This document shows, in pieces, positions 22,585 to 35,826 of a stretch of DNA of 64,000 nt. The translations under genes and the position numbers were made by a program. How positions within the stretch are numbered: position 1 is the first letter of the stretch; each line of letters begins with the position of its first letter. The stretch is from Phallusia mammillata (Eukaryota), in NCBI GenBank assembly GCA_965637545.1, contig OZ281495.1:23250001-23314000 (forward strand). Direction: 5' to 3'. The notes beneath the pieces are model-generated. The model worked only from the letters and a program-made list of their open reading frames with translations. It was not told the DNA's origin and did not search any database.

Positions 22585-22870
22585 GGTGTTGGTTAAAAGA
22601 CACAACACTGCAAAACAGAAAGTTTTTTGTTGATCAGCTCTTTGCCTCTTAACTTCTACTGAGGTTACAATCTGTCACAAGTGATGAAATAGTATTATAA
22701 AACTAAACATTTGTGACAATATTCTAAAACAGTAATAATAGATAACAAACAATATTTTTGGAACGCGAAGTTCGCGATTCGCGCCAAATGGCGGTTACTT
22801 TGACACGACCGCCAGCTGAACGTTTAATTGGCGAAGCATATCGGTGTGTAAATAATGTGGCATGTAATGG

Positions 22871-23151
22871 GGCGCCGTTGTCGAATAAATTAAGTTGCCG
22901 CAACTTAATTTTTTCGACAACGGCGCCTTAAGGCCGTTTTGAAAACAAACAAACAACTTGCAAGATAGCCAAGTTGCGGCAACTTAGCGTTGCAAGTTAG
23001 CTAAGTTTCTTTGCAAGTTAACTAAGTTGCCGCAAGATAACCTAACATGCGGCAAGTTAGCTAACTTGCAACGCTAAGTTGCCGCAAGTTAGCAATGTTT
23101 CGTTGCAAGTTAGCTATCTTGCTGCAACTTAATTTATTCGACAACGGCGCC
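22871..23151. repeat. Nested palindromic (foldback-like) element upstream of WDHD1
   Basis: 57-bp hairpin at 22871-22927 (ggcgccgttgtcgaataaattaagttgc..gcaacttaattttttcgacaacggcgcc). A second right-hand copy of the same arm ends at 23151. Internal inverted ~31-mers (ttgcggcaacttagcgttgcaagttagctaa and its reverse complement). Confidence 0.8.
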
Positions 23152-24264
23152 GCATGAGAGACAATTAAGTAAGTAGTCTCTGGTTTCATAGTTTAAAAAC
23201 GTTCAAAAACATTAACCCTTTATTTTAAATAAAAAGCAATTTACGCCCCACATTAAACCTATTATCCAGAGGCCTGGAAAATTTTGCCATTGCATGACAT
23301 TTTCTGCTCTCAACGTTAATGTTAGGCCATCATTCTCATAAAAAAAACAGAGAACAGAAACGAAGTATTCGGCAATCAACAGTAACATTTTTACAGCGTC
23401 TAAGCAATATTAAAAATTTAAGCTCACTTGGCCATTTTTTAACTTTGATTGAGCCTGCATTACCAACTTCGGATTTTTGACAGACATAATGCAAATTTTT
23501 TTTTTCTTGTCGAATTTTAGCCCAAGAAATTTTTTTGCAAGATTTTATATTCTTTTTATTGTTTAATTTGATTCCATTGTGGGCGATGTTTAAAACTATC
23601 ATTTTGTACAAGTCAATGGACTTAAACTTCACATTTTGTGCTGCAATTAAGACATGTATAGATTTGTACCCCTACAAAATAGATTTGAAGAATTTGAACT
23701 ATCGATGGATTCCTTGGTTTGCAAGTCACGTAGGTTGGTTAATTTACGAGTATAATGCTAAAAATCACGTTAGAACATTTCATTTTACGAAAACTTTGTG
23801 TTGTCTAACTGTTTTTGCGAATAAGTTACAAGTAGGCCTAGGCCTACATAAAGTAAAGTTAAGGTAAGACGTTTTATTAAGTTTTAAAAAATACACTGAA
23901 ATAGGGCGATAATAAGCAAGAAAAAACAATAAATCGTGTAGGAAAAAGTTCTTTTTATCGCAAAAGCATTGTGCGTAGAAATGAACATCAGAAATACAAT
24001 ACAAACGTACGGCGCAATATAAATGGACCAAAATAGGAAGACACTTTAATGCAGGCGATAATTTTAAACCCTGCAAATGACTTTATGTCACGCTACGGAA
24101 TCGTATTTGTAATTGCAGTTGATTGGCCAAGTTACTTTTCTCGTCCCACTGGTGTTTAGCAACGACTTCTGTTCGGATGAAAAGTCGTGGTGCCCACTAA
24201 AACAACAGGTATAAAGAAGAAGTATAAGTAAGGCGTTCTTGACATCTTGCCTACGGCGGCGGCA

Positions 24265-25291
24265 TTACAGATCCTGGACTGCGGCCACCGCCAATTGTCT
24301 GGTTGCTTTGGTTTCAAAATTACTGATGTGAAGAAATAGGTTTTTAGGCCAAGATTAATTTCTAACTTGATACACAGAATAAGGTGAACAGTCTGACCAT
24401 CAGTCGCAACTGCTTATGACGTCATAATCTATATTGTAACGCTTATGGCATATGTTTTTTCGCATTGTTTGCACACAATATGCGTACTAAAAGTCTGACG
24501 GATATAGTAATTGGCTGTCCCACAAAATCTGTTTAGAGCAGTTTGTAAATGAAATTAGTTAGCAAAAGAGTTTTATTTACGTCACGTCCGCCAGTACATA
24601 TATATTTTGATACGTTCACATCCGCATAAACTCGTCTCTGCGACCGCATGTGGCCGTACGGCCGCAAGTTGTGCACCCCTGCCCCAAAATAACCAAGTAG
24701 TATACCCTTAAAATACATTTCTGAAAAGCGTTAAATTACTGCATACTGAAGGTCAATTTTTTAGTACGATCGCAACAATCAGGTATTTGAAATACATTTT
24801 GTGTTAAGCTTAAGTGGGAGTACATATACCATTGTTGCAGATATAAAAACTTACCTCCACTGATGCGAACATAATTCCCGTCTGGTGATACAACTGAACA
24901 TAAGCCAGAATATAACACAAAACAGGACAATTATCACCAACACATAGATAAAGATTGGAAAAACGAGATCAGCCGCAAGATCATTTACCACTGGTAAAGC
25001 TGCAAACAGAGAGAAAATTTAAGGCATAAGTCGAATGGTTTCAAGTTTTAGCATGGTTGACAATAACAGTTGTTTACCACGTTGATAGGCAACTCACTTG
25101 TTTGAGCAAGTAGGCCTCGTGTTAAAAAGCTTCTTGTATTTACAACAGTATTAAACAAAATTATACCACCGTGTTGCTTCATAACGAATAACACCTTTAA
25201 CCAACTACTGAATATACGCAGTTTATTTCGTACCTGTCGATGACACGTTGAACTCTTTAGCAATTCCTTCAAACTGTACCTCTTTCTCCAT
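24265..25291 (-). CDS. Putative 86-aa single-pass membrane microprotein, 3 exons (not represented in the ORF track)
   Basis: Exons 25234-25291, 24855-24999, 24265-24322, all with canonical pyrimidine-rich AG and GTA donors, phases 1 then 2. Protein: MEKEVQFEGIAKEFNVSSTALPVVNDLAADLVFPIFIYVLVIIVLFCVIFWLMFSCITRRELCSHQWSNFETKATRQLAVAAVQDL. One ~24-aa hydrophobic span, an NVS sequon before it, and RR after it. Confidence 0.65.
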
Positions 25292-25912
25292 CACTGCATA
25301 AAACAAATGCTTATCACACAGTATACCAGTCGCTGGAACAGGTAAGTCGGCAACACAGGGTCGTTATCGGGTCAAAAATAAAAGAAGTTTGTCGCGCAAA
25401 AGCAAATGTAGGTCGTGCCCTCGGCTGCACCCGTACTTCTAACCTTGTTTACATTCGTAAGTTGACAATCACCAAACTGTTACAGGGAAAGAGGCAGCAA
25501 ACGGGCATTTCGGGCGTATCAGGTTGCATGGAGTTTTCGATTATTTGTCTGTTTTTTGATTTTGGTAATTAAAAGAATTGGTGACACCTTTGCTTGCCTG
25601 TGTCTCTCTGTCATTGATTTTCAAAGGCAAATTTTGATCCCAAAAATATCATATTTAAGCTTATAAAAGAAAAGCTTAAATAGTAAACCCAAGGTAATAG
25701 GTTTTACTAGTGATGTAAAGCTGCTTTGTCGATGTTTCGACTCGAATCTTTTTCGGTGAGTTTGTTGCATTATTTGTTTATATTCAACCCCAGTGCCATA
25801 TGCTTGATGAATTTTAAGTGGTAGAATTCTAAACAATTAAGCTTACGAAAGTTGACAAAAGACCTAACAATAATAGCTGAGCAAATTTAACAAACAAACT
25901 GGCGGTAATACA

Positions 25913-26639
25913 CAGTGCCGGATTAACCATTAGGCAAAGTAGGCACGTGCCTACAGGCCAGTTAAAAATCCAGGCCACTTCAAAATCTGTAGAAATTTAG
26001 TCATGTTTTCAAAACAATTACTTTCTAAACTAATATGTATTTACTGTAATAGGTTTTTCCAGATGAATTAAACGTTGCAAAAATCGTTAAAAAATACGAA
26101 TTGAAACATGTTGCCACCTTTTTGATGTTTTTAAAAATTCGCATTTCTGTTGAGTGACGCAACGAAACAAATCAATCTAAACATGGATGATTTTGTTAAC
26201 TGGGTATGACTTAGAGCAGGGGCGGGCAACATACGGCCCGCAGACAGTTTCAGGTCTTATATGATAATGTGGCCCGCGGCCACAGTCTGCCGCAATACCC
26301 CACTACTTGCTTACTGCGTCAAATTATAGTTATAAATGTAACGGACAGTGACGCTCCCCAATAGCAAAAAACTTTACCGCCGTTGTTGCCATTGCACCAT
26401 ACGTCCATTGTTACGACATAACTGCCAACCATGTATGGCCTGCTTTCACGGTTTCCTTTGTTTCCACACGTGTAGTCTAGTTAGTGTTTGAGCAGTATCT
26501 AAGTCTGTGGTGTATGCATTAAATTTGCTGTGGTGAATATTTTTATGTTATATCAGTCTAATTTTTTAGTTGGCAACCCTGATTTTCGGGCCACTTACAA
26601 TATGTGCCTACAGGCCAGCAGACCCTTAATCCGGCACTG
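25913..26639. mobile_element. hAT MITE containing nested fragments of other MITEs
   Basis: TIR CAGTGCCGGATTAA / ttaatccggcactg; 8-bp TSD GTAATACA vs GTAGTACA (7/8); subterminal gtgcctacaggcca repeat; another hAT-type end (caggggcgggcaac) at 26217. Confidence 0.8.
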
Positions 26640-27613
26640 GTAGTACAGGGGTAACTTCGAATCAGACGTTTCGTTTTAAATGGGGTTCAGAGACACATAT
26701 TGTTTTGCCCTGTGAATACTATTGCAGCGTCTGGTCTCCAGTGGCAAATAAGTTTCACAAAGTTGAAATGGTGATTGACGTTCCATAGGATCAGTGTATT
26801 GTCTTTTGTTTGCGTGTTTAATTGTCGGGTGTCCATCACAAATCAATCTTTGTAACGGGCATTTAACAGTTTTTATTTCAATCACAAAGCAAGTTGAGTT
26901 TAGTTTGCTTGAAGGCTACAAACTTGTTAACCGAATAATTTGCATTAAAAACCCACTGAATTTTTCATTTCTTCCAAATACATTATGATCTCATAAAAAA
27001 TCAACGGATTGCCTTTTTGTGGACAACCAAGTTGAATAATAGTTTTTCAAACTTCACAAAAAAAAGAATTGTTAAGTCTTGCAACAGAAGTTTAAACTTA
27101 AACACTTTAAAAGACATTTTTGTGCAAAAAAACGGTATCGAGATCCAATGAAAATTAACCAAACGCTTTTCAATCGGTTTTATGCCAGTGTTAAATCTTC
27201 CACGGTTTTTCAACGGTTTGTTCGGAAATATTTCAGGACACAGATATGCGACTTAACAGCAAAACAAACCTAGACGATCAGCGTGTTTTACAGACGAGTG
27301 CCAACAAGATATGTTGGTCACTGAAGCAGTCAAAACAACTTTTCAAATCCTGTCTCTCTATGATATTATAAACAAAAAATGACGAAGAGATAAAATTTGT
27401 ATTTTAAAATTTGACAATATAAAAGCACTATTAATTCGATATAACAACTCTTCACACATGTTGGGTTGCGCAAAGTAAGTAAACATCCACGAAAAAAAAT
27501 ACAATTTTCGACGATAAATTTTTTTTTCGCGAAAAATGAGAAGCACTGTGGCCGTGTAGGCGAAAAATTAACGTGTTTAAAACATACGAATAAAACTTGG
27601 ACTTTATCCAGTA

Positions 27614-30600
27614 CTATACTAACGTTAGCGATTGCTTCTTAGCGGCAGCAACTGTTGAAGGTATAGACTTTACTGAGTCATTACCGCTATCGCAGGGCGA
27701 TGATGCACGTGCTGGAGATAATTGTTTACCCAGACGTTCAGTGTTGTGTCTGATAGTTGGTTTACTACGTTGTGAAAAGGCGGTTTGACTGCTGACTGCG
27801 CTTGGCTCCGATTCAGAGGTTGGCGAAGTAGAACCTGAAGTCTCAGACGCCGAAAGGGACATAGATCTTGGTCTGGAACTCTTAACCCCATGCAAATAAT
27901 CTTCTGAAGCTATGGTGGACGCCGAGGTGGTCTCGCTTTGGCCACTAGTCCTTGCTAAAACACGCTGGTGATATTTCCGCGCCTCCAGATCGAGTGTCGC
28001 ATACGGCCGCACGTGCGCGCTATCGGGGTATATACATCTGGGCATGCCTGGTTGCCAAGTATCGTTGTACAGTACAGCATCATAGGAAGGTACAACTACA
28101 CCCACTGGCGGGGCTTGTTGTTGATAATTCATTTTTGACAGATATGAGCGTGGAATTGTTGATTGATGGAAATACTGAAGTGGTATTGACGTCATACAAC
28201 GGCCGCGCCCAAATGATTCTCGTCTTTGTTCGGCAGAAACCGGCGCTACCGGCGGCTTTGCATTGGTGTACACAGTTGATGATTTTTTGGGCGGAGAATT
28301 TGTTTCCCGTTGTTGCTTGTGAGAGCTGTCGTCTCGTTTATCTGTAGTATTGTTGCTGTTTAACGTTAAGTGAAGCGACTCGTTTTCAATTATTTCGACG
28401 CTCGACCCATCCATTTCAGTGCTTTCTTTGGTCTTGATTGGTGAGCGACGAAGGTTGTTTGACTGCTCCACTGTACTAAAAAGACATAGCATGTTTTGTT
28501 TGCATACTACAGAGAGTAACAACTTTAATGGTTTCATATGAAGTCATACCGAAAGCTGAACATTTGTAGAGAATGGGGCGTAGAACCGAATCCAGCTTGT
28601 TTTTCGCACGCAAGTGGTGACTTGCAATTAGCATAACTTACATCTTTGATTGGGTACTTGGTTCCATGTCGAAGTCTGTCAATGCATCATGTGTTAAAAA
28701 ACGTTGTCGATGCTTTTTCTACGCGGCAAAATCTCATCCACCGTGCATTAATTACAAGTATATGTGTGGTTAGCAATGGAAAGCAAAGTGTGGTGCGTGA
28801 AAAGAATTTATGGGACACTTGCAAAATATTGTGTGTACAAAAAAAATTAAAAATAATTTAAGTGTTAGCCTTTTATGTTTAAAGTTAAGCGGGCTTGTCT
28901 TTCTTTCACTTCACGTTGACCGCACAATATGCTTTAATGCATTGCTTGGGTTAAGAAGATACTAAATTATATTAGTGCATTGCCGATTCTTGCACTAATG
29001 AGTTTGCACATCCCTGATAAATGCTATCAACGCCAAAAATGCCAATGCGAAAGCAAAAACGTGATGTAACGTACTCTCTATCGGCGCCGGAGGTCAGATC
29101 AGACTGACACCGGGTCATGGCACCCAAGGGCGTCGACGTACAACCTGGTTCCGATACAAGGACGCCGTCTGGCGGTTCGCTATACTGAAGGTAGTTTTTG
29201 AATTTGCTGCAAAAAAAGAAAACAAAACGTGTGACATGCAACGGTGACCAAAAACATCAATACACACTTGTGAGTGAAGAACTAAATGCTGCGTTGTAAC
29301 ACAGATCGACTTACTCTTCAAGGTTGACTTCGGCCGAATTTCGGATTTTGCATCTTCGGTAACTCAGCCAACAGACGGCGCCCAAGAGTATAATGAACAC
29401 AAACGCACAGATGACAACAGTGACGGAGAATTCCACGATTGAAAGCTTGCCAATTTTTTCTGTACCAAAAACGACTTTCCAATTGTTTTGTACAATAAAG
29501 TTGAAACAGAAATGATTCCACTTACGTTGTGGAGGGGGAAGCTGGATGTAAGTTTCATTTGCTTCAACGTCCAAACCATTATGCACAACACAAACATACG
29601 GAGTAACACTTTCTACTTCAGATGATTCCAACCTTAATGTTGACTGATTTCCCTTCGTTTCAGTTCCTGTCGCAAAAAACGTATTTTAAGACACCCCAGA
29701 AAGAGCGACCCTATTTGATTGATCACGTCGTTTATCAAACAAGCCCTTTAGAAGAGTTTGTTCCCAAAATATCCCGTACAGGGTTCTTCGTTTAGAGGGT
29801 ATGGATAATGCATCAAAGCAGGCGCATGGTAATAAGGGATTACAGAACAGACGTGTGTGGGGAAGGTGAGAGGCAACCTGCTACCCTTTTGTGCGAGGCG
29901 CTAAATTTATCAAATATTGATTCTGGACGTACTACTGGGCGCAGTGCATTCGTCATCAAAAGTTTGACGTTTGTGAATAATGGGCTTATTAGCAATCCAA
30001 CGTCTTTAGCCTCGGCAATGAGTAAATGCATCGTTTATATTCAGGACCAGGGGGGATTTGATTGACAAGCATCCGAATTTTATACAGTTTGTTTACTATG
30101 TACAACCACAAAATTTTTTACTTTGAAAGTACTGAAAAAAACAAGGAGCATTTATTCTTACATGAGAAGTTAAAACAACTTACCATTAGGAAAAATCCAC
30201 CTGTATATTGGTGGTGGTGAGCTTCCGCCCTTAGCTGTACACGAGAGGTTGTTATCTTTTTCCCGGTGAATGCCAACATTTGACGGTGGATAATGAACTG
30301 TGACCATAATATCAGATTTAGCGCTTCCTGGCACATAGTTGTATGCAACGCATTTGTACAAGCCAGACTGAGAGCGATGGACACCAGCGAGCAACAGCTG
30401 GTTTTTCTCGGTATAATCTTCTCGCATCAGTTTTCGGTCTGTAGGGACAGAACATCTTTGATTCTTAACCGACACGCCTAATTAACAGTTTGTAAGGCAA
30501 TGTGGAAAAAAGCGAAATCAGAGGCTTGTACATTATGATACCTGTTTCAATCTATGTATTGACAAAAACAATTTTATGTTTTACAACGTCAAAATTATAT

Positions 30601-33600
30601 TAAAAAGACAACGTTAACATAAGTTTAACTCTTTAACACAAGCTAAGCGTAAAGTTTAATATTATTTGATTTATTTATTCATTTATCGAATTCGGATTCG
30701 GATTTCAAAAATTTGACCCAAATCGCCTGGATAATCAAGGAAGCACTTGTATTAACTTCACATTAATTATAGCATTGGGAAATTAAAAAGCAACACAAAA
30801 CATTTGTATTATGAAAACGCCAATAAAACATAATACGGAAATATGTGCCTGACCCCCGAAAGTACCCAGGTTGTTAATGCTGTGTATTAAAAAGTGCGTT
30901 TGCCTTACCCTGAAAATACCAATCATATGTGCATTCCGGTTGCGAAAGAACACGACAAGTAAGTTTCAGGTCTTCCCCTTCACGCACAATCGCATGTCGT
31001 GGTTCAGAAAAGATTCGAATTCCATTCGTGTCCGGTGGGTCTGCAAAAACGTATGTAAGCATCAGTCTGACCAGTCAGGCAAAGAACTGTATAATGAATG
31101 TCCCTTAAGGGACGCAGCGGCACTAAGTAGCGAGTTAACATGCATGTTTTGCGTGTCCGATCCATTAATGGCTTTGGACAAAGCCCAATTCCCACATCAA
31201 CCGACCAAAGGCGGAGGTTCGCCATAGAGCATAGGCCAAATCAACGTCCGGTATTAAGCACACATCGATCGAATACACAACGTCCCGATTGTATGGTGAA
31301 GTACGATGATGAGACGCATGCGCGGTGACAGATCTAAGAGATTAATTGATCGCCTGGTAATGGGCTAGAGATAGGAAAAAGTTGAAACAATTCCGATGGC
31401 AAGAAATAGTAACACGCCACATTTGGTTGTGCTTTGCGCACATATTATCAAATCGAAAAAGAGTATGTGCATTTGTGAACAATTTTTTTCCGAGGCGAGT
31501 GTCTTGGAATGATGCTGGCTCGTAATTGCATTGCATTAATTATTAAATTTGATAAAATCGACACGACAACGATTTTGATCCGCTACTTGTCCTCTTTGTG
31601 ACCTGCTGGAATTGAATCAAAAGCCAGATTTGAGATATTGTGTAACAGAAAATCGTTATTCGGTGGTTGCGTGTAAGATCACATCAAAAGCTAAACCACA
31701 CTTGTTGTTTGCCGTGATTCGGTGCAACCCTCTGCTAGGAGAATTCTTTTAATGCTAATCCCAGAAAGTAAAATCTTAGGTTTTTTGCCTTTGTTGCTAA
31801 TTTTCTTTGTTTAAAATACTGTTATTTCCTCAAGAAGAATTAAGGTTATACTTATCTTTAACATACATAGGTTAAATGGCCGGGGATCTTTTCCAAATGT
31901 TTTTGTAGCTGCATTCCAGAAGTTATATGAGCAAAATAGTTTACACTTTACAGCATCGTAAAAATGTTTTACAATGGCATAAACGTATTCATATTAAAAA
32001 ACAATCGAGCATCGTCCGACAATAATTTTTAACTTACAGTCGATAGAGAGTTTGTTTGTTCGTTCCACGGCTGTGACGAACCCTGTGAGCTGTGACGTAT
32101 TGGTAAGGCGACAACTGAATGTTGCGTCATCACGACCCCTTCTGACGTCAACAAATCGAAGTTGGGAAGTGATTTTGGCCTGAGACGAACTAAGTCTTGT
32201 GTATTTCGTGAAAACTGTAAAATATAAATTTAGTGATATTTCTTGAAAATACTTATATAGTGTGTGTTTTTGTTAACATCTGAAAAGGCAAACGTAAGAT
32301 TTCTATCGTTGAAAGCAATGGGTTGAGTGAAAACACGGTTTAAATTTTTTTTTAAAACTCCGATTTAAACCACAGAACAGTCAATTCTATGAAAATATTA
32401 TTTGAGTTGCTTAAAAGACAAGAATTTTAGATAATAAATTATTCGCAGTTTTATTAACGAGGAGAATTTTTTATATATATCCCGAGTTGACATTTTAACA
32501 AAGTGACAAAGAACATAAGTATAACGTGGGATGTACTGTCATATTCATTTGATGGAGTATCGATCATCCGTCCATCTTTTGTCCACTCAAAATCGAGATC
32601 GTAGTCACTTGTGGTAAGCCCGCGCGAATTGGTCACGTGAGCTATGCATTCCATGCGGTAGCCGGATGCGGAAACCGGAAGCGATGTGTTGAATTGCGTC
32701 ACAGTCCGAAACAATGTGGCTAAAATATTTGTAAACATCGTTGTCAATATAACCAAGGTTTAAAACAATATTTTGCAATTTTTGTCTATTTTAGTACTGA
32801 AGATACTATTAAAGTTAACTACTATTAAAGTTAAGTTAAAAATAACACATGTATATTGTTTGTCAATACCTTGCAGATTTCGAATTACCTGTATCTTAAC
32901 AGAGGCATTTTTATTTAATCAGCGGGCAAGTTACAAGTAGAAGTAAATTTCTCTGCAATTTTTGAACTGAACACCAACTTTTAACCAGATGTGAGTAAGA
33001 TATGTTGTATATATGTTGAGCATTTCCATTTCAATCACATCTTTCACAGAAAAATAAATTTCTAAAGCCGATACCCGTACGCAAACAAAGCCGACTCTAA
33101 ATCCCAACTTACGCAAATCGCGTGCGCGCTGCACAACCAAGGTGCTGACGGCTTCCGGCTTCAAACTACTTGAGGCGACGCAAGCGTAACGACCGTCTCC
33201 AAGAGAGGATTCGCTGAGGTAGAGGTGTTGAACATCCCGTACAACATCGCCGTTAGGAAGAATCCATCTTATCGACGGGGTCGGATTTCCTTCCGCTTCA
33301 CAAGTAAGCCGGTTTCCAAGCAATTTGATTTGTGCAAGAGGTGGATCTGAATAAACCGATTGAAAAGAACGGGTGTTTAAGTTATTCTTTCCACAGAAGC
33401 ATGCATTTTGTATGGATATACGAGCGCTTCGACACAACATTTAAAAACTAAAACCCAATCGTTGGGCCACTTTCGAAAAAGACGGTAAATCGAATCAAGA
33501 AATTAAGATCTTTCAAATACTTCCATGTGGATTTAGGAGCAAATATAACAAAATTGTTACACACAACTCATGTACGTCTACTCTAGATGATTTTAGTTGA

Positions 33601-35826
33601 TGACTGACTGCAAGCAAAATTGAATCTGCAATAACCAAGAATTTGTGGTTGACCAGATTAACATTAATTGTAATAGGCTGCACTTACAAGAAGAAGTCAG
33701 TGACGAAGAATCTTTTCATGGGGACAAATACACAAAGAAAATGTATTTTAGTCTTTGGAACTTACACAAGAGATTCACTGTGACAGTTGAGGTTTTGGCT
33801 TCAATCGAACTCAAATCATCATGATTTACGAGGCACGAAAAATCCTGTCTACTCGAGTTTCCTGCTTCAGCACCCGACCCAAGATAATCCGGTGCAAGAC
33901 CCGGTGTGAGTTTTAACACTGAGATGACGTCAAAAGAACCGTCAGGGGCCTGTGAGCTGGTCAATGTGGAATCCTGAATCTAAAGGAAAGTATGTCGAGT
34001 AAGCAATCGTTAGGATTTAACCAAAATTGAACTTCATCCACTTGAGAGCGAGAAGTACAAAGCAGTTCACCGCTAAACCTTGCCACTCGTAAGAAAACAA
34101 AGCTGTCACCATTTGTTTGAAAACATTCATTGCAAATCGAATTTATCTCTATTGTCGATGCGACAAGTACTATATAGAGCAGTGGTTCTCAACCTTTTAA
34201 GTTTGCGGACCGGTAAACTTTCGAAACAAATTTTGCGGACCGGTGGGCTTTCAAATCAACCCAAAAAGTAATCACGACAAAATTATACTATTCAAAAGAA
34301 TATAAAAAATCAATTTATGCTGTTGTCTGTTTGATATCATACGTTTTAACGCGGTTCTAAAGAAATTTCTGCAAGAAAGTAGAGCGTTGACTTCCACACG
34401 ATTTATCGGCCTTCAACATCTTGCATTTTGCAATTGAGATATAAAATTGTAATATATTTGGCGGACCGGCAGGAAAGTTGACGCGGACCGGCGGTTGAGA
34501 ACCACTGATATAGAGTACGGTAAGTAAGCACTCGACAAGAAAGCATAGTTGATTTTAAGCGTTGTATCTCTAAACGTGCATTGAATGCGGTGGTTAAGTA
34601 AATGTTTAGGTCGAAAGGTGGATAATAAGCAGATTGAATTTGTGTAGATGCAATATTCAATGTTGCACTTGCTCATGTTTTGTTGTATGAAGGATACAAA
34701 AAACATGATTGTGTCTTTGTAATGAATAGCACTGCTAGCGTATACACAATATGGCAGGAATGACCAAAACGGCAGGTTTAATTCGGGTTTGCTAAATTGA
34801 AAAAAAAATGTAAGTTGGTCTAATCAGACGCGGTTAAAAATAAAAAGCTGTTATATATAACACTATGGTATTTACGTACAGAAGAAATATGGAAAACACG
34901 ATTTTTTAATCCAAAAACGTGATTGCAGTTTGTACCTGTCCATCTGAATCTGTCCACGTGATTTGTGCTCGAGGTTTGCCTCCTATTGCTCTGCACGAGG
35001 CGGCACGATATTTTCCATCAGTTCCAACTTTTGGCGATGTAACCAATTCGGTGCTTACACTCGGCGCAGCTGAAATTAAAACACAGTTAAAAACAATGTT
35101 TAGAGCATTACAATCATTTCGTAAAACAAACCGATGATATTACTGCATTTTTTACTACACCATACATCACTGTTACTACACCATGGCATCACAGTTTTTG
35201 CAAATCTTGCAAGCAAATGTTTATTAACTCGAACAATTCTTGTTGGGCGTATAAACATATGATATTTTGTGGTTACCCGTGACGTCCAAGGTTACAACAG
35301 AGGTTGTCGCACTCTCAACTGTCAGCACAGTGCAAGAATATATTCCAGAATCGCTGATTTGCAAATTTCGTATCTGAAGGCTGGCTTCGTTGAACTGGGC
35401 TCTTCCTTCCAAGGCTTCACTACAAACATCAAATCATAAGTAAAACAGCGAATTGGTGTAACAAGCAAATCTTATTTATTGGTAAACGAGGCAAAACATA
35501 CCAAGCAGCAAAACACAGATGTAGCAGAATTCAACAAGTAATTGGGAAAATTTATCGTTATAATGTACATACTTGATGCTCGGGTTTCCTGATACAGAAT
35601 ATGCGACGGTGATAGTTTTGCCCTCAATGCTTTTAGTCCAGCTTATGGTGGGAGACGATGAAGTGTCTGCGAAGCATGTTAATGTCGCTGCTCCACCTCG
35701 CCGGGCCTTTACCGTCGTTGATGTGCCCTTTTGCCCGTCTGATAAACCAAGCGACATCCATAGCAGCACAACTATGGCAAATCGCATGTACCTGTACATA
35801 CCACCTCTGCGACTTTCATTATCCAT
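27614..35826 (-). CDS. Type I membrane Ig-superfamily adhesion receptor with six Ig domains (nectin/CADM-like N-terminus), ~993 aa, 13 coding exons
   Basis: Phase-consistent exons: 35573-35826, 35277-35419, 34936-35069, 33766-33979, 33113-33346, 32526-32719, 32038-32179, 30909-31040, 30184-30438, 29526-29666, 29315-29459, 29075-29206, 27614-28475. Signal peptide MRFAIVVLLWMSLGLSDG; V-set (LTC..ISW..DSGIYSC); C-type (CRAIGGKP..ITW..FSCLVNH); four more Cys/Trp Ig domains, with YPP linkers before domains 3, 5 and 6; TM FSVTVVICAFVFIILLGAVCWL; long Ser/Thr-rich tail ending TLV. Confidence 0.9.
34180..34507. mobile_element. hAT MITE in intron 3 of the Ig gene
   Basis: TIR CAGTGGTTCTCAAC; perfect 8-bp TSD ATATAGAG (34172-34179, 34508-34515); subterminal gcggaccgg repeats. 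Confidence 0.93.

What the first reader, a model, noticed from the sequence alone, without database searches (positions are those of the whole stretch)
24265..25291. Hidden three-exon 86-aa type III membrane microprotein
Seen: three small exons with good splice sites join in frame to give an N-terminal segment with an NVS sequon, a ~24-residue hydrophobic helix (VFPIFIYVLVIIVLFCVIFWLMFS), juxtamembrane Cys and RR, and a short tail. No ORF in the track gives this frame. Known: this topology (no signal peptide, N-out, glycosylated) is shared by small channel and transporter regulators such as KCNE and by many SMIM proteins. I recognise no homologue. Inference: an undescribed lineage-specific microprotein.
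Basis: partly seen in the sequence, partly recalled or inferred. Interest (0 to 1): 0.7.

Follow-up and report, generated by a model that had tools for sequence, protein, structure and literature searches.

The report
Expressed sea-squirt single-pass membrane microprotein gene
A small three-exon gene really is transcribed and spliced here.

Summary
RNA-like contigs from two studies carry the 25234/24999 joint, and contigs from three studies carry a joint from the 24855 donor. That donor joins to 24196, not to the predicted 24322, so the predicted exon 3 (24322-24265) is intronic. The real exon 3 runs from 24196 to about 23603, with the stop codon at 24088-24090. Counted exon by exon, the product is 103 aa, not 86. 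It has an acidic 30-aa N-terminus with an NVS sequon, a very hydrophobic helix of about 27 aa followed by Cys and Arg-Arg, and a 46-aa tail ending in DSVA.

Exon 2 is open in the required frame with a helix this hydrophobic in 1 of 20,000 composition-preserving shuffles. No homologue was found among 1.84 billion representative proteins, or in Pfam, the PDB, the ESM Atlas, JGI metagenome contigs or the organism's own genome, where the gene is single copy. Translation, topology and cross-species conservation are untested, because no tunicate genome collection was available.

Verdict: this is a real, probably protein-coding, apparently lineage-restricted small membrane-protein gene lying between WDHD1 and an Ig-superfamily gene. 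It is of modest interest.

The parts
25234..25358 (-). Exon 1: a 5' UTR of at least 40-67 nt, then the start codon at 25291-25289 and 19 codons plus 1 base of coding sequence, down to the donor at 25234
   Evidence: RNA-like contigs reach 25331, 25337 and 25358, and the joint sits at 25234. Translation. The nearest in-frame upstream stop is at 25366-25364, with no in-frame ATG between it and 25291. The context gtgATGG has a purine at -3 and G at +4.
25291..25299 (-). Minimal upstream ORF, ATG-CAG-TGA, whose stop overlaps the main ATG. In all four runs laid it reads ATG-TAG, through a G>A difference at 25296 on the plus strand.
   Evidence: Sequence; variant table
25241..25249 (-). NVS sequon, residues 15-17, about 15 residues before the hydrophobic segment
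25000..25233 (-). Intron 1, 234 nt, GT..AG
   Evidence: Joint 24999->25234 in X1 and X4, absent from X15. Intron-retaining contigs also exist, notably X2 record 20.
24855..24999 (-). Exon 2, 145 nt: 47 whole codons that include the transmembrane segment
   Evidence: It is the only one of the three frames of this exon without a stop.
24887..24967 (-). Coding sequence for the hydrophobic helix (LVFPIFIYVLVIIVLFCVIFWLMFSCI), followed directly by TRRE
   Evidence: The Kyte-Doolittle 19-residue mean peaks at 3.31. This was matched in 1 of 20,000 shuffles.
24197..24854 (-). Intron 2, 658 nt, GT..AG.
   Evidence: Joint 24196->24855 in X1, X2 and X4, absent from X15
24382..24690 (.). Interspersed repeat of about 300 nt inside intron 2
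   Evidence: The own-genome DNA search gave 1847 first-look candidates; the 39 scored copies elsewhere in the genome are 74-82% identical and lie on contigs C1-C8. X15 word depth rises from about 86 to as much as 17,400 here.
23603..24196 (-). Real exon 3: 1 base plus 35 codons (24195-24091), the stop codon at 24090-24088, then a 3' UTR of at least about 485 nt. The 3' end is not determined.
   Evidence: Contigs cover 23603-24196 (X2), 23626-24196 (X1) and 23816-24196 (X4). Translation. The acceptor reads ...ctgttgttttag|TGGGC.

Best explanation
This is an independent, single-copy, three-exon gene on the minus strand, between an Ig-superfamily membrane-protein gene upstream and WDHD1 downstream. 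Its mRNA is at least about 860 nt long. The mRNA is most likely translated from the AUG at 25291 into a 103-residue protein, counted exon by exon as 19 + 1 split codon + 47 + 1 split codon + 35. The protein has no signal peptide. Residues 1-30 are acidic (net -4) and carry one NVS sequon. Residues 31-57 form a strongly hydrophobic helix. After Cys and Arg-Arg comes a 46-residue tail (net +2) that ends in Asp-Ser-Val-Ala. From the charge asymmetry I infer that the helix acts as a reverse signal-anchor, putting the short N-terminus in the ER lumen or outside the cell and the tail in the cytoplasm (type III topology). I also infer that the protein works as a small accessory or adaptor subunit of a larger membrane protein, through helix packing in the membrane and tail contacts. 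The C-terminal S-V-A could serve as a PDZ-type ligand, and the juxtamembrane Cys could be palmitoylated. Shown here: transcription, both splice junctions, the open frame, the hydrophobicity, single-copy status and the absence of detectable relatives. Inferred: translation, topology, glycosylation and any partner.
For: Splicing: joint 24999->25234 in X1 and X4, and joint 24196->24855 in X1, X2 and X4, which come from three studies. Both joints are GT..AG on the minus strand and both are absent from the evenly covered DNA-like run X15.

Independence: RNA depth is zero in 25400-25799 and in 23200-23599. No listed joint links the locus to either neighbour.

Reading frame: the frame from the first in-frame AUG, which sits in a strong context, crosses both junctions and stops in the last exon. 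Exon 2 has stops in both other frames.

Hydrophobicity: the 19-residue peak is 3.31. Shuffled exon 2 is both open and equally hydrophobic in 1 of 20,000 trials, or 1 of the 1705 open shuffles.

Polymorphism: coding differences between the reference and the runs are 2 synonymous and 1 non-synonymous, giving pN/pS of about 0.13.

Copy number: exon 2 and exon 3 each match only themselves in the 240-Mb genome.
Against: There is no evidence of translation. No homologue was found anywhere, so conservation of the frame is unknown. The polymorphism result is not significant (P = 0.11). The density of differences in the coding sequence (3 in 309 nt) is about the same as in the introns (7 substitutions and 2 indels in 892 nt). 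The ORF occupies only about a third of the transcript. A 98-codon stop-free frame with no ATG lies in the gene's own 3' UTR at 23780-24076, so open frames of this length do arise by chance in this AT-rich DNA. The runs are labelled RNA only as a guess, and contigs cannot give strand or transcript ends.
Confidence: 0.6

Rival explanations
1. The transcript is a spliced long non-coding RNA, or a very young de novo gene, and its 103-codon frame is fortuitous and not translated into a functional protein. The hydrophobic run would then be a by-product of the thymine-rich exon 2.
For: No relative was found in any collection. Exon 2 is 41% T on the coding strand. The coding sequence shows as many differences per base as the introns. 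The polymorphism ratio is not significant. A 98-codon open frame arises by chance in the 3' UTR.
Against: The frame starts at the first in-frame AUG in a strong context and crosses both junctions, with the stop in the last exon. The hydrophobic helix far exceeds what the exon's composition gives, at 1 of 20,000 shuffles. The charge distribution around the helix follows the positive-inside rule. Two of the three coding differences are synonymous.
Confidence: 0.27
2. The first reader's 86-aa isoform, in which exon 2 joins the acceptor at 24322, exists as a real alternative product.
For: The frame closes correctly, and an AG with a moderate pyrimidine tract precedes 24322. Contigs drop rare variants, so a minor isoform cannot be excluded. 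Three further joints were found but not listed.
Against: All three RNA-like runs join 24855 to 24196, and none of the listed joints ends at 24322. The only contigs over 24265-24322 are low-depth and continuous with the flanking intron (X1 record 2, X4 record 25), which is what unspliced RNA looks like. The acceptor at 24196 has the better pyrimidine tract.
Confidence: 0.04
3. The three exons are alternative terminal or leader exons of a neighbouring gene, either the Ig-superfamily gene upstream or WDHD1 downstream, and not a gene of their own.
For: All three genes lie on the minus strand within a few kb of each other. Contigs cannot prove that a link is absent.
Against: No listed joint leaves 25358 going upstream or 23603 going downstream. 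All three RNA-like runs have zero-depth gaps on both sides. The Ig gene's last exon has its own stop at 27614, and its contigs end at about 27406-27425. The contig of the downstream transcript ends at 22708.
Confidence: 0.05

Closest known systems
Small integral membrane proteins (the 'SMIM' naming bin) and other single-pass type III microproteins such as SMAGP
   Same: About 100 residues, no signal peptide, one central transmembrane helix, a short N-terminal ectodomain with a glycosylation sequon and a short cytoplasmic tail. This comparison is from general knowledge. The architecture is read.
   Different: SMIM is a label for size and topology, not a homologous family. No sequence similarity to any Pfam family was found, nor to any of 1.84 billion representative proteins.
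KCNE channel beta-subunits (Pfam PF02060, ISK_Channel)
   Same: Predicted N-out single-pass topology with an N-terminal N-glycosylation sequon, and a size of about 100-130 residues.
   Different: No match to the family profile at E <= 10 with exon 2 or exon 3. No partner channel is known. The resemblance is architectural only.
Adipogenin (Pfam PF15202)
   Same: A small single-pass protein. Exon 2 residues 1-35 align to profile positions 6-39 of 79.
   Different: The score is 10.6 bits (E = 0.67) against a curated cut-off of 27. That is the same level as two unrelated hydrophobic hits, YhaL and PspB. No adipogenin-like protein appeared in the search of all representatives. I treat the hit as noise.
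De novo membrane proteins arising from thymine-rich DNA (described in yeast; from my own knowledge, not checked in a paper here)
   Same: An orphan ORF with no relatives, a T-rich coding exon (41% T) and a single predicted transmembrane helix.
   Different: The helix is far more hydrophobic than the exon's composition predicts, and the gene has two introns and a defined mRNA. Whether it arose recently could not be tested.

Membership tests
KCNE (PF02060, ISK_Channel) | Sequence match to the family profile | tested here: not met
   hmmscan of exon 2 and exon 3 against Pfam-A at E <= 10 lists no ISK_Channel hit
KCNE (PF02060, ISK_Channel) | Type I/III N-out topology with a glycosylated N-terminus, and association with a Kv channel | not testable with these tools
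   Topology is inferred only from the charge asymmetry around the helix. Glycosylation and any partner need experiments.
Adipogenin (PF15202) | Score at or above Pfam's gathering cut-off of 27 bits | tested here: not met
   10.6 bits, E = 0.67
FXYD ion-transport regulators | An F-X-Y-D motif just before the transmembrane helix | tested here: not met
   The motif is absent from the exon 1 and exon 2 translations, and there is no Pfam hit
Single-pass membrane microprotein (descriptive class) | A product of about 100 residues or fewer on a real mRNA, with one hydrophobic helix of 20 or more residues | tested here: met
   Spliced transcript; 103 codons counted exon by exon; hydropathy peak of 3.31 over 19 residues
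Single-pass membrane microprotein (descriptive class) | The protein is actually made and inserted in a membrane | not testable with these tools
   No ribosome-profiling or proteomic data were available
Lineage-specific (orphan) gene | No homologue outside a narrow lineage | tested here: inconclusive
   Protein searches with exon 2 were blank, but the query is only 47 aa. Other ascidian genomes could not be searched at the DNA level, and a search meant to reach syntenic loci was also blank.

The most novel reading that the evidence does not exclude
A robustly expressed type III membrane protein gene restricted to ascidians, or to this one species. It would have arisen recently from thymine-rich non-coding DNA between WDHD1 and an Ig-superfamily gene, acquired two introns, and now act as an accessory subunit with a PDZ-type C-terminus.
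Probability: 0.3. Interest if true: 0.4.

Novelty: new member of a known kind. Interest (0 to 1): 0.3.

Why it matters
If translated, this adds one more small single-pass membrane protein to the large and mostly uncharacterised set of animal microproteins. It sits in a chordate model group where knock-outs and live imaging are easy. It is also a check on method: reading raw sequence found two of the three exons and one junction exactly, but the terminal exon could not be placed correctly without RNA data. The gene answers no long-standing question, and orphan genes of this size are common in ascidian genomes.

Tried and rejected
1. Search of all 1.84 billion representative proteins with exon 2. 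The only hit, P0001, is the translation of a tandem repeat and not a relative.

2. Pfam on exon 2 and exon 3. Only noise-level hydrophobic hits appeared. The Adipogenin lead was rejected at 10.6 bits against a cut-off of 27.

3. PDB sequence search. Only chance matches to transmembrane helices.

4. ESM Atlas feature search. No usable hit.

5. Own-genome search for paralogues of exon 2 and exon 3. Each matches only itself.

6. JGI metagenome contigs, using the 55-aa open frame around exon 2. The corrected query found nothing.

7. Synteny route to other ascidians. A search with the neighbouring WDHD1 exon, meant to obtain orthologue ids and then their flanking DNA, found nothing, so the route was closed. 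The tool's length window probably contributed.

8. Rfam over 23300-25700. Only a sub-threshold archaeal snoRNA model at E = 0.23.

9. Literature search for 'ascidian' plus 'microprotein'. Nothing relevant; the nearest paper concerns myoblast-fusion proteins.

10. All searches went exon by exon by reference. For that reason no structure prediction or full-length profile search was run.

Full report
WHAT THE SEQUENCE SHOWS

- Exon 1 (25291-25234) reads MEKEVQFEGIAKEFNVSST plus one base.
- Exon 2 (24999-24855) reads two bases, then 47 codons that hold the hydrophobic run, a Cys and RR, then two bases.
- The predicted exon 3 (24322-24265) reads one base, 18 codons and a stop.
- The splice-site contexts are cag|GTACG, tttgcag|C and gag|GTAAG.

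RNA EVIDENCE

One stretch of 6 kb (22600-28599) was laid against contigs of four public runs.

X15 behaves as genomic DNA. Its word depth is an even 86 or so everywhere outside repeats, and it carries none of the intron-skipping joints.

X1, X2 and X4 come from three different studies and are labelled RNA only as a guess. They behave as RNA:
- Their coverage is patchy. It is zero in 23200-23599, 25400-25799 and 26800-26999.
- They carry joints with CT..AC on the plus strand, which is GT..AG on the minus strand.

The joint 24196->24855 appears in X1, X2 and X4.

No listed joint ends at 24322. Three further joints were found but not shown. The only contigs over 24265-24322 are low-depth ones continuous with the surrounding intron (X1 record 2 and X4 record 25), as expected of unspliced precursor. 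The predicted exon 3 is therefore intronic in these data.

THE CORRECTED GENE

- Exon 1 spans at least 25358-25234. Contig ends lie at 25331, 25337 and 25358.
- Intron 1 is 234 nt.
- Exon 2 is 24999-24855.
- Intron 2 is 658 nt.
- Exon 3 runs from 24196 down to at least 23603.

The acceptor at 24196 follows a better pyrimidine tract (ctgttgttttag) than the one at 24322. In the frame set by the junction, exon 3 gives one base plus GHHDFSSEQKSLLNTSGTRKVTWPINCNYKYDSVA and a stop at 24090-24088.

Counted exon by exon, the product is 19 + 1 (split codon G|CT, Ala) + 47 + 1 (split codon AG|T, Ser) + 35 = 103 residues.

The ATG at 25291 is the first in-frame ATG after an in-frame stop at 25366-25364. 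It sits in the context gtgATGG.

IS IT MORE THAN CHANCE?

- Exon 2 has stops in its two other frames.
- In 20,000 dinucleotide-preserving shuffles of exon 2, the required frame stayed open in 8.5%. It was both open and had a 19-residue hydropathy peak at least as high as the observed 3.31 only once.
- The helix is therefore not explained by the exon's 41% T content.
- The 35 codons of exon 3 before the stop are not unusual. Twelve percent of shuffles do as well.
- A 98-codon open frame without an ATG lies in the 3' UTR. ORF length alone is therefore weak evidence.

POLYMORPHISM

The runs differ from the reference at three coding positions, all in exon 2:
- two synonymous (codons 17 and 21);
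- one His-to-Tyr change at codon 45 of exon 2, in the tail just after the helix. All four runs carry it.

This gives pN/pS of about 0.13, but with P = 0.11. The density of differences in the coding sequence is similar to that in the introns. This hints at constraint and no more.

ARCHITECTURE (read)

- Residues 1-30 are hydrophilic and acidic (net -4), with N15-V-S.
- Residues 31-57 are the helix.
- Residues 58-103 start with TRRE, have net charge +2, contain three Cys, and end in D-S-V-A.
- There is no N-terminal signal peptide.

The sequon lies about 15 residues from the helix, which is close to the minimum distance usually needed for glycosylation (general knowledge). Topology, glycosylation, palmitoylation of the juxtamembrane Cys and a PDZ-type role for the C-terminus are all inferences.

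CONTEXT

The gene is single copy in the 240-Mb genome.

Upstream on the same strand lies an Ig-superfamily membrane-protein gene. It has Ig domains at about 30170-35826. Its long tail exon ends at a stop at 27614, and its contigs end near 27406-27425.

Downstream lies WDHD1 (Pfam WD40_WDHD1_1st, E = 2.5e-18). A long transcript contig, most likely the WDHD1 transcript, ends at 22708.

No listed joint links the new gene to either neighbour.

Intron 2 carries a dispersed repeat of about 300 nt at 24382-24690. The own-genome search gave 1847 first-look candidates, and the 39 scored copies elsewhere in the genome are 74-82% identical.

HOMOLOGY

- Exon 2, scored against every one of 1.84 billion representative proteins, gave only a tandem-repeat artefact.
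- Pfam gave three noise-level hydrophobic hits. Adipogenin is among them at 10.6 bits against a cut-off of 27. There was no KCNE hit.
- The PDB, the ESM Atlas and JGI metagenome contigs gave nothing.
- These blanks come from a 47-residue query and have limited reach.
- No tunicate genome collection was available. An attempt to reach syntenic loci through the WDHD1 neighbour also failed.
- Whether the gene is lineage-specific, and whether the species' own annotation already lists it, therefore remains open.

VERDICT

A real, spliced, apparently independent transcript encodes a frame for a 103-residue single-pass membrane protein with no detectable relatives. I put the probability that it is translated at about 0.6.

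The main rival is a non-coding or newly arisen transcript, at about 0.27.

This is an ordinary kind of object, an orphan small membrane-protein gene. It is worth correcting in an annotation and easy to test in embryos, but a specialist would not find it surprising.

Noticed in passing
window 25291-25299 (minus strand): A three-codon upstream ORF, ATG-CAG-TGA, overlaps the main ATG. In all four runs laid, a G>A difference at 25296 turns it into a bare start-stop, ATG-TAG. The sequence tttgttttatgcag just before 25293 also looks like a splice acceptor. It could take a trans-spliced leader, which would remove the upstream ATG.
   Followed up: partly
window 24382-24690: A dispersed repeat of about 300 nt inside intron 2. 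The own-genome search gave 1847 first-look candidates, and the 39 scored copies elsewhere in the genome are 74-82% identical on contigs C1-C8. No terminal inverted repeat was found, only a 12-nt palindrome at 24649-24666.
   Followed up: partly
window 25800-26800 and 22800-23200: Very high-copy repeats flank the gene. The word depth of the DNA-like run X15 reaches about 116,000, against a single-copy level of about 86. Fragments of these repeats are also present in the RNA-like contigs.
   Followed up: no
window 24865: The reference genome encodes His at codon 45 of exon 2. All four other runs, including the DNA-like one, have Tyr. The reference individual may carry a minority allele, or this may be an assembly error.
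   Followed up: partly
window 23780-24076 (minus strand): A 98-codon stop-free frame without any ATG lies inside the 3' UTR of the gene. It is a useful reminder of how long chance open frames can be in this AT-rich DNA.
   Followed up: no
window 27406-35826 (minus strand): An Ig-superfamily single-pass membrane-protein gene with several Ig exons, a transmembrane exon at about 29311-29631 and a Ser/Thr-rich tail exon of about 286 aa. The tail exon has no Pfam match. The gene is expressed, and a 74-nt intron at 28476-28549 is confirmed in three runs.
   Followed up: partly
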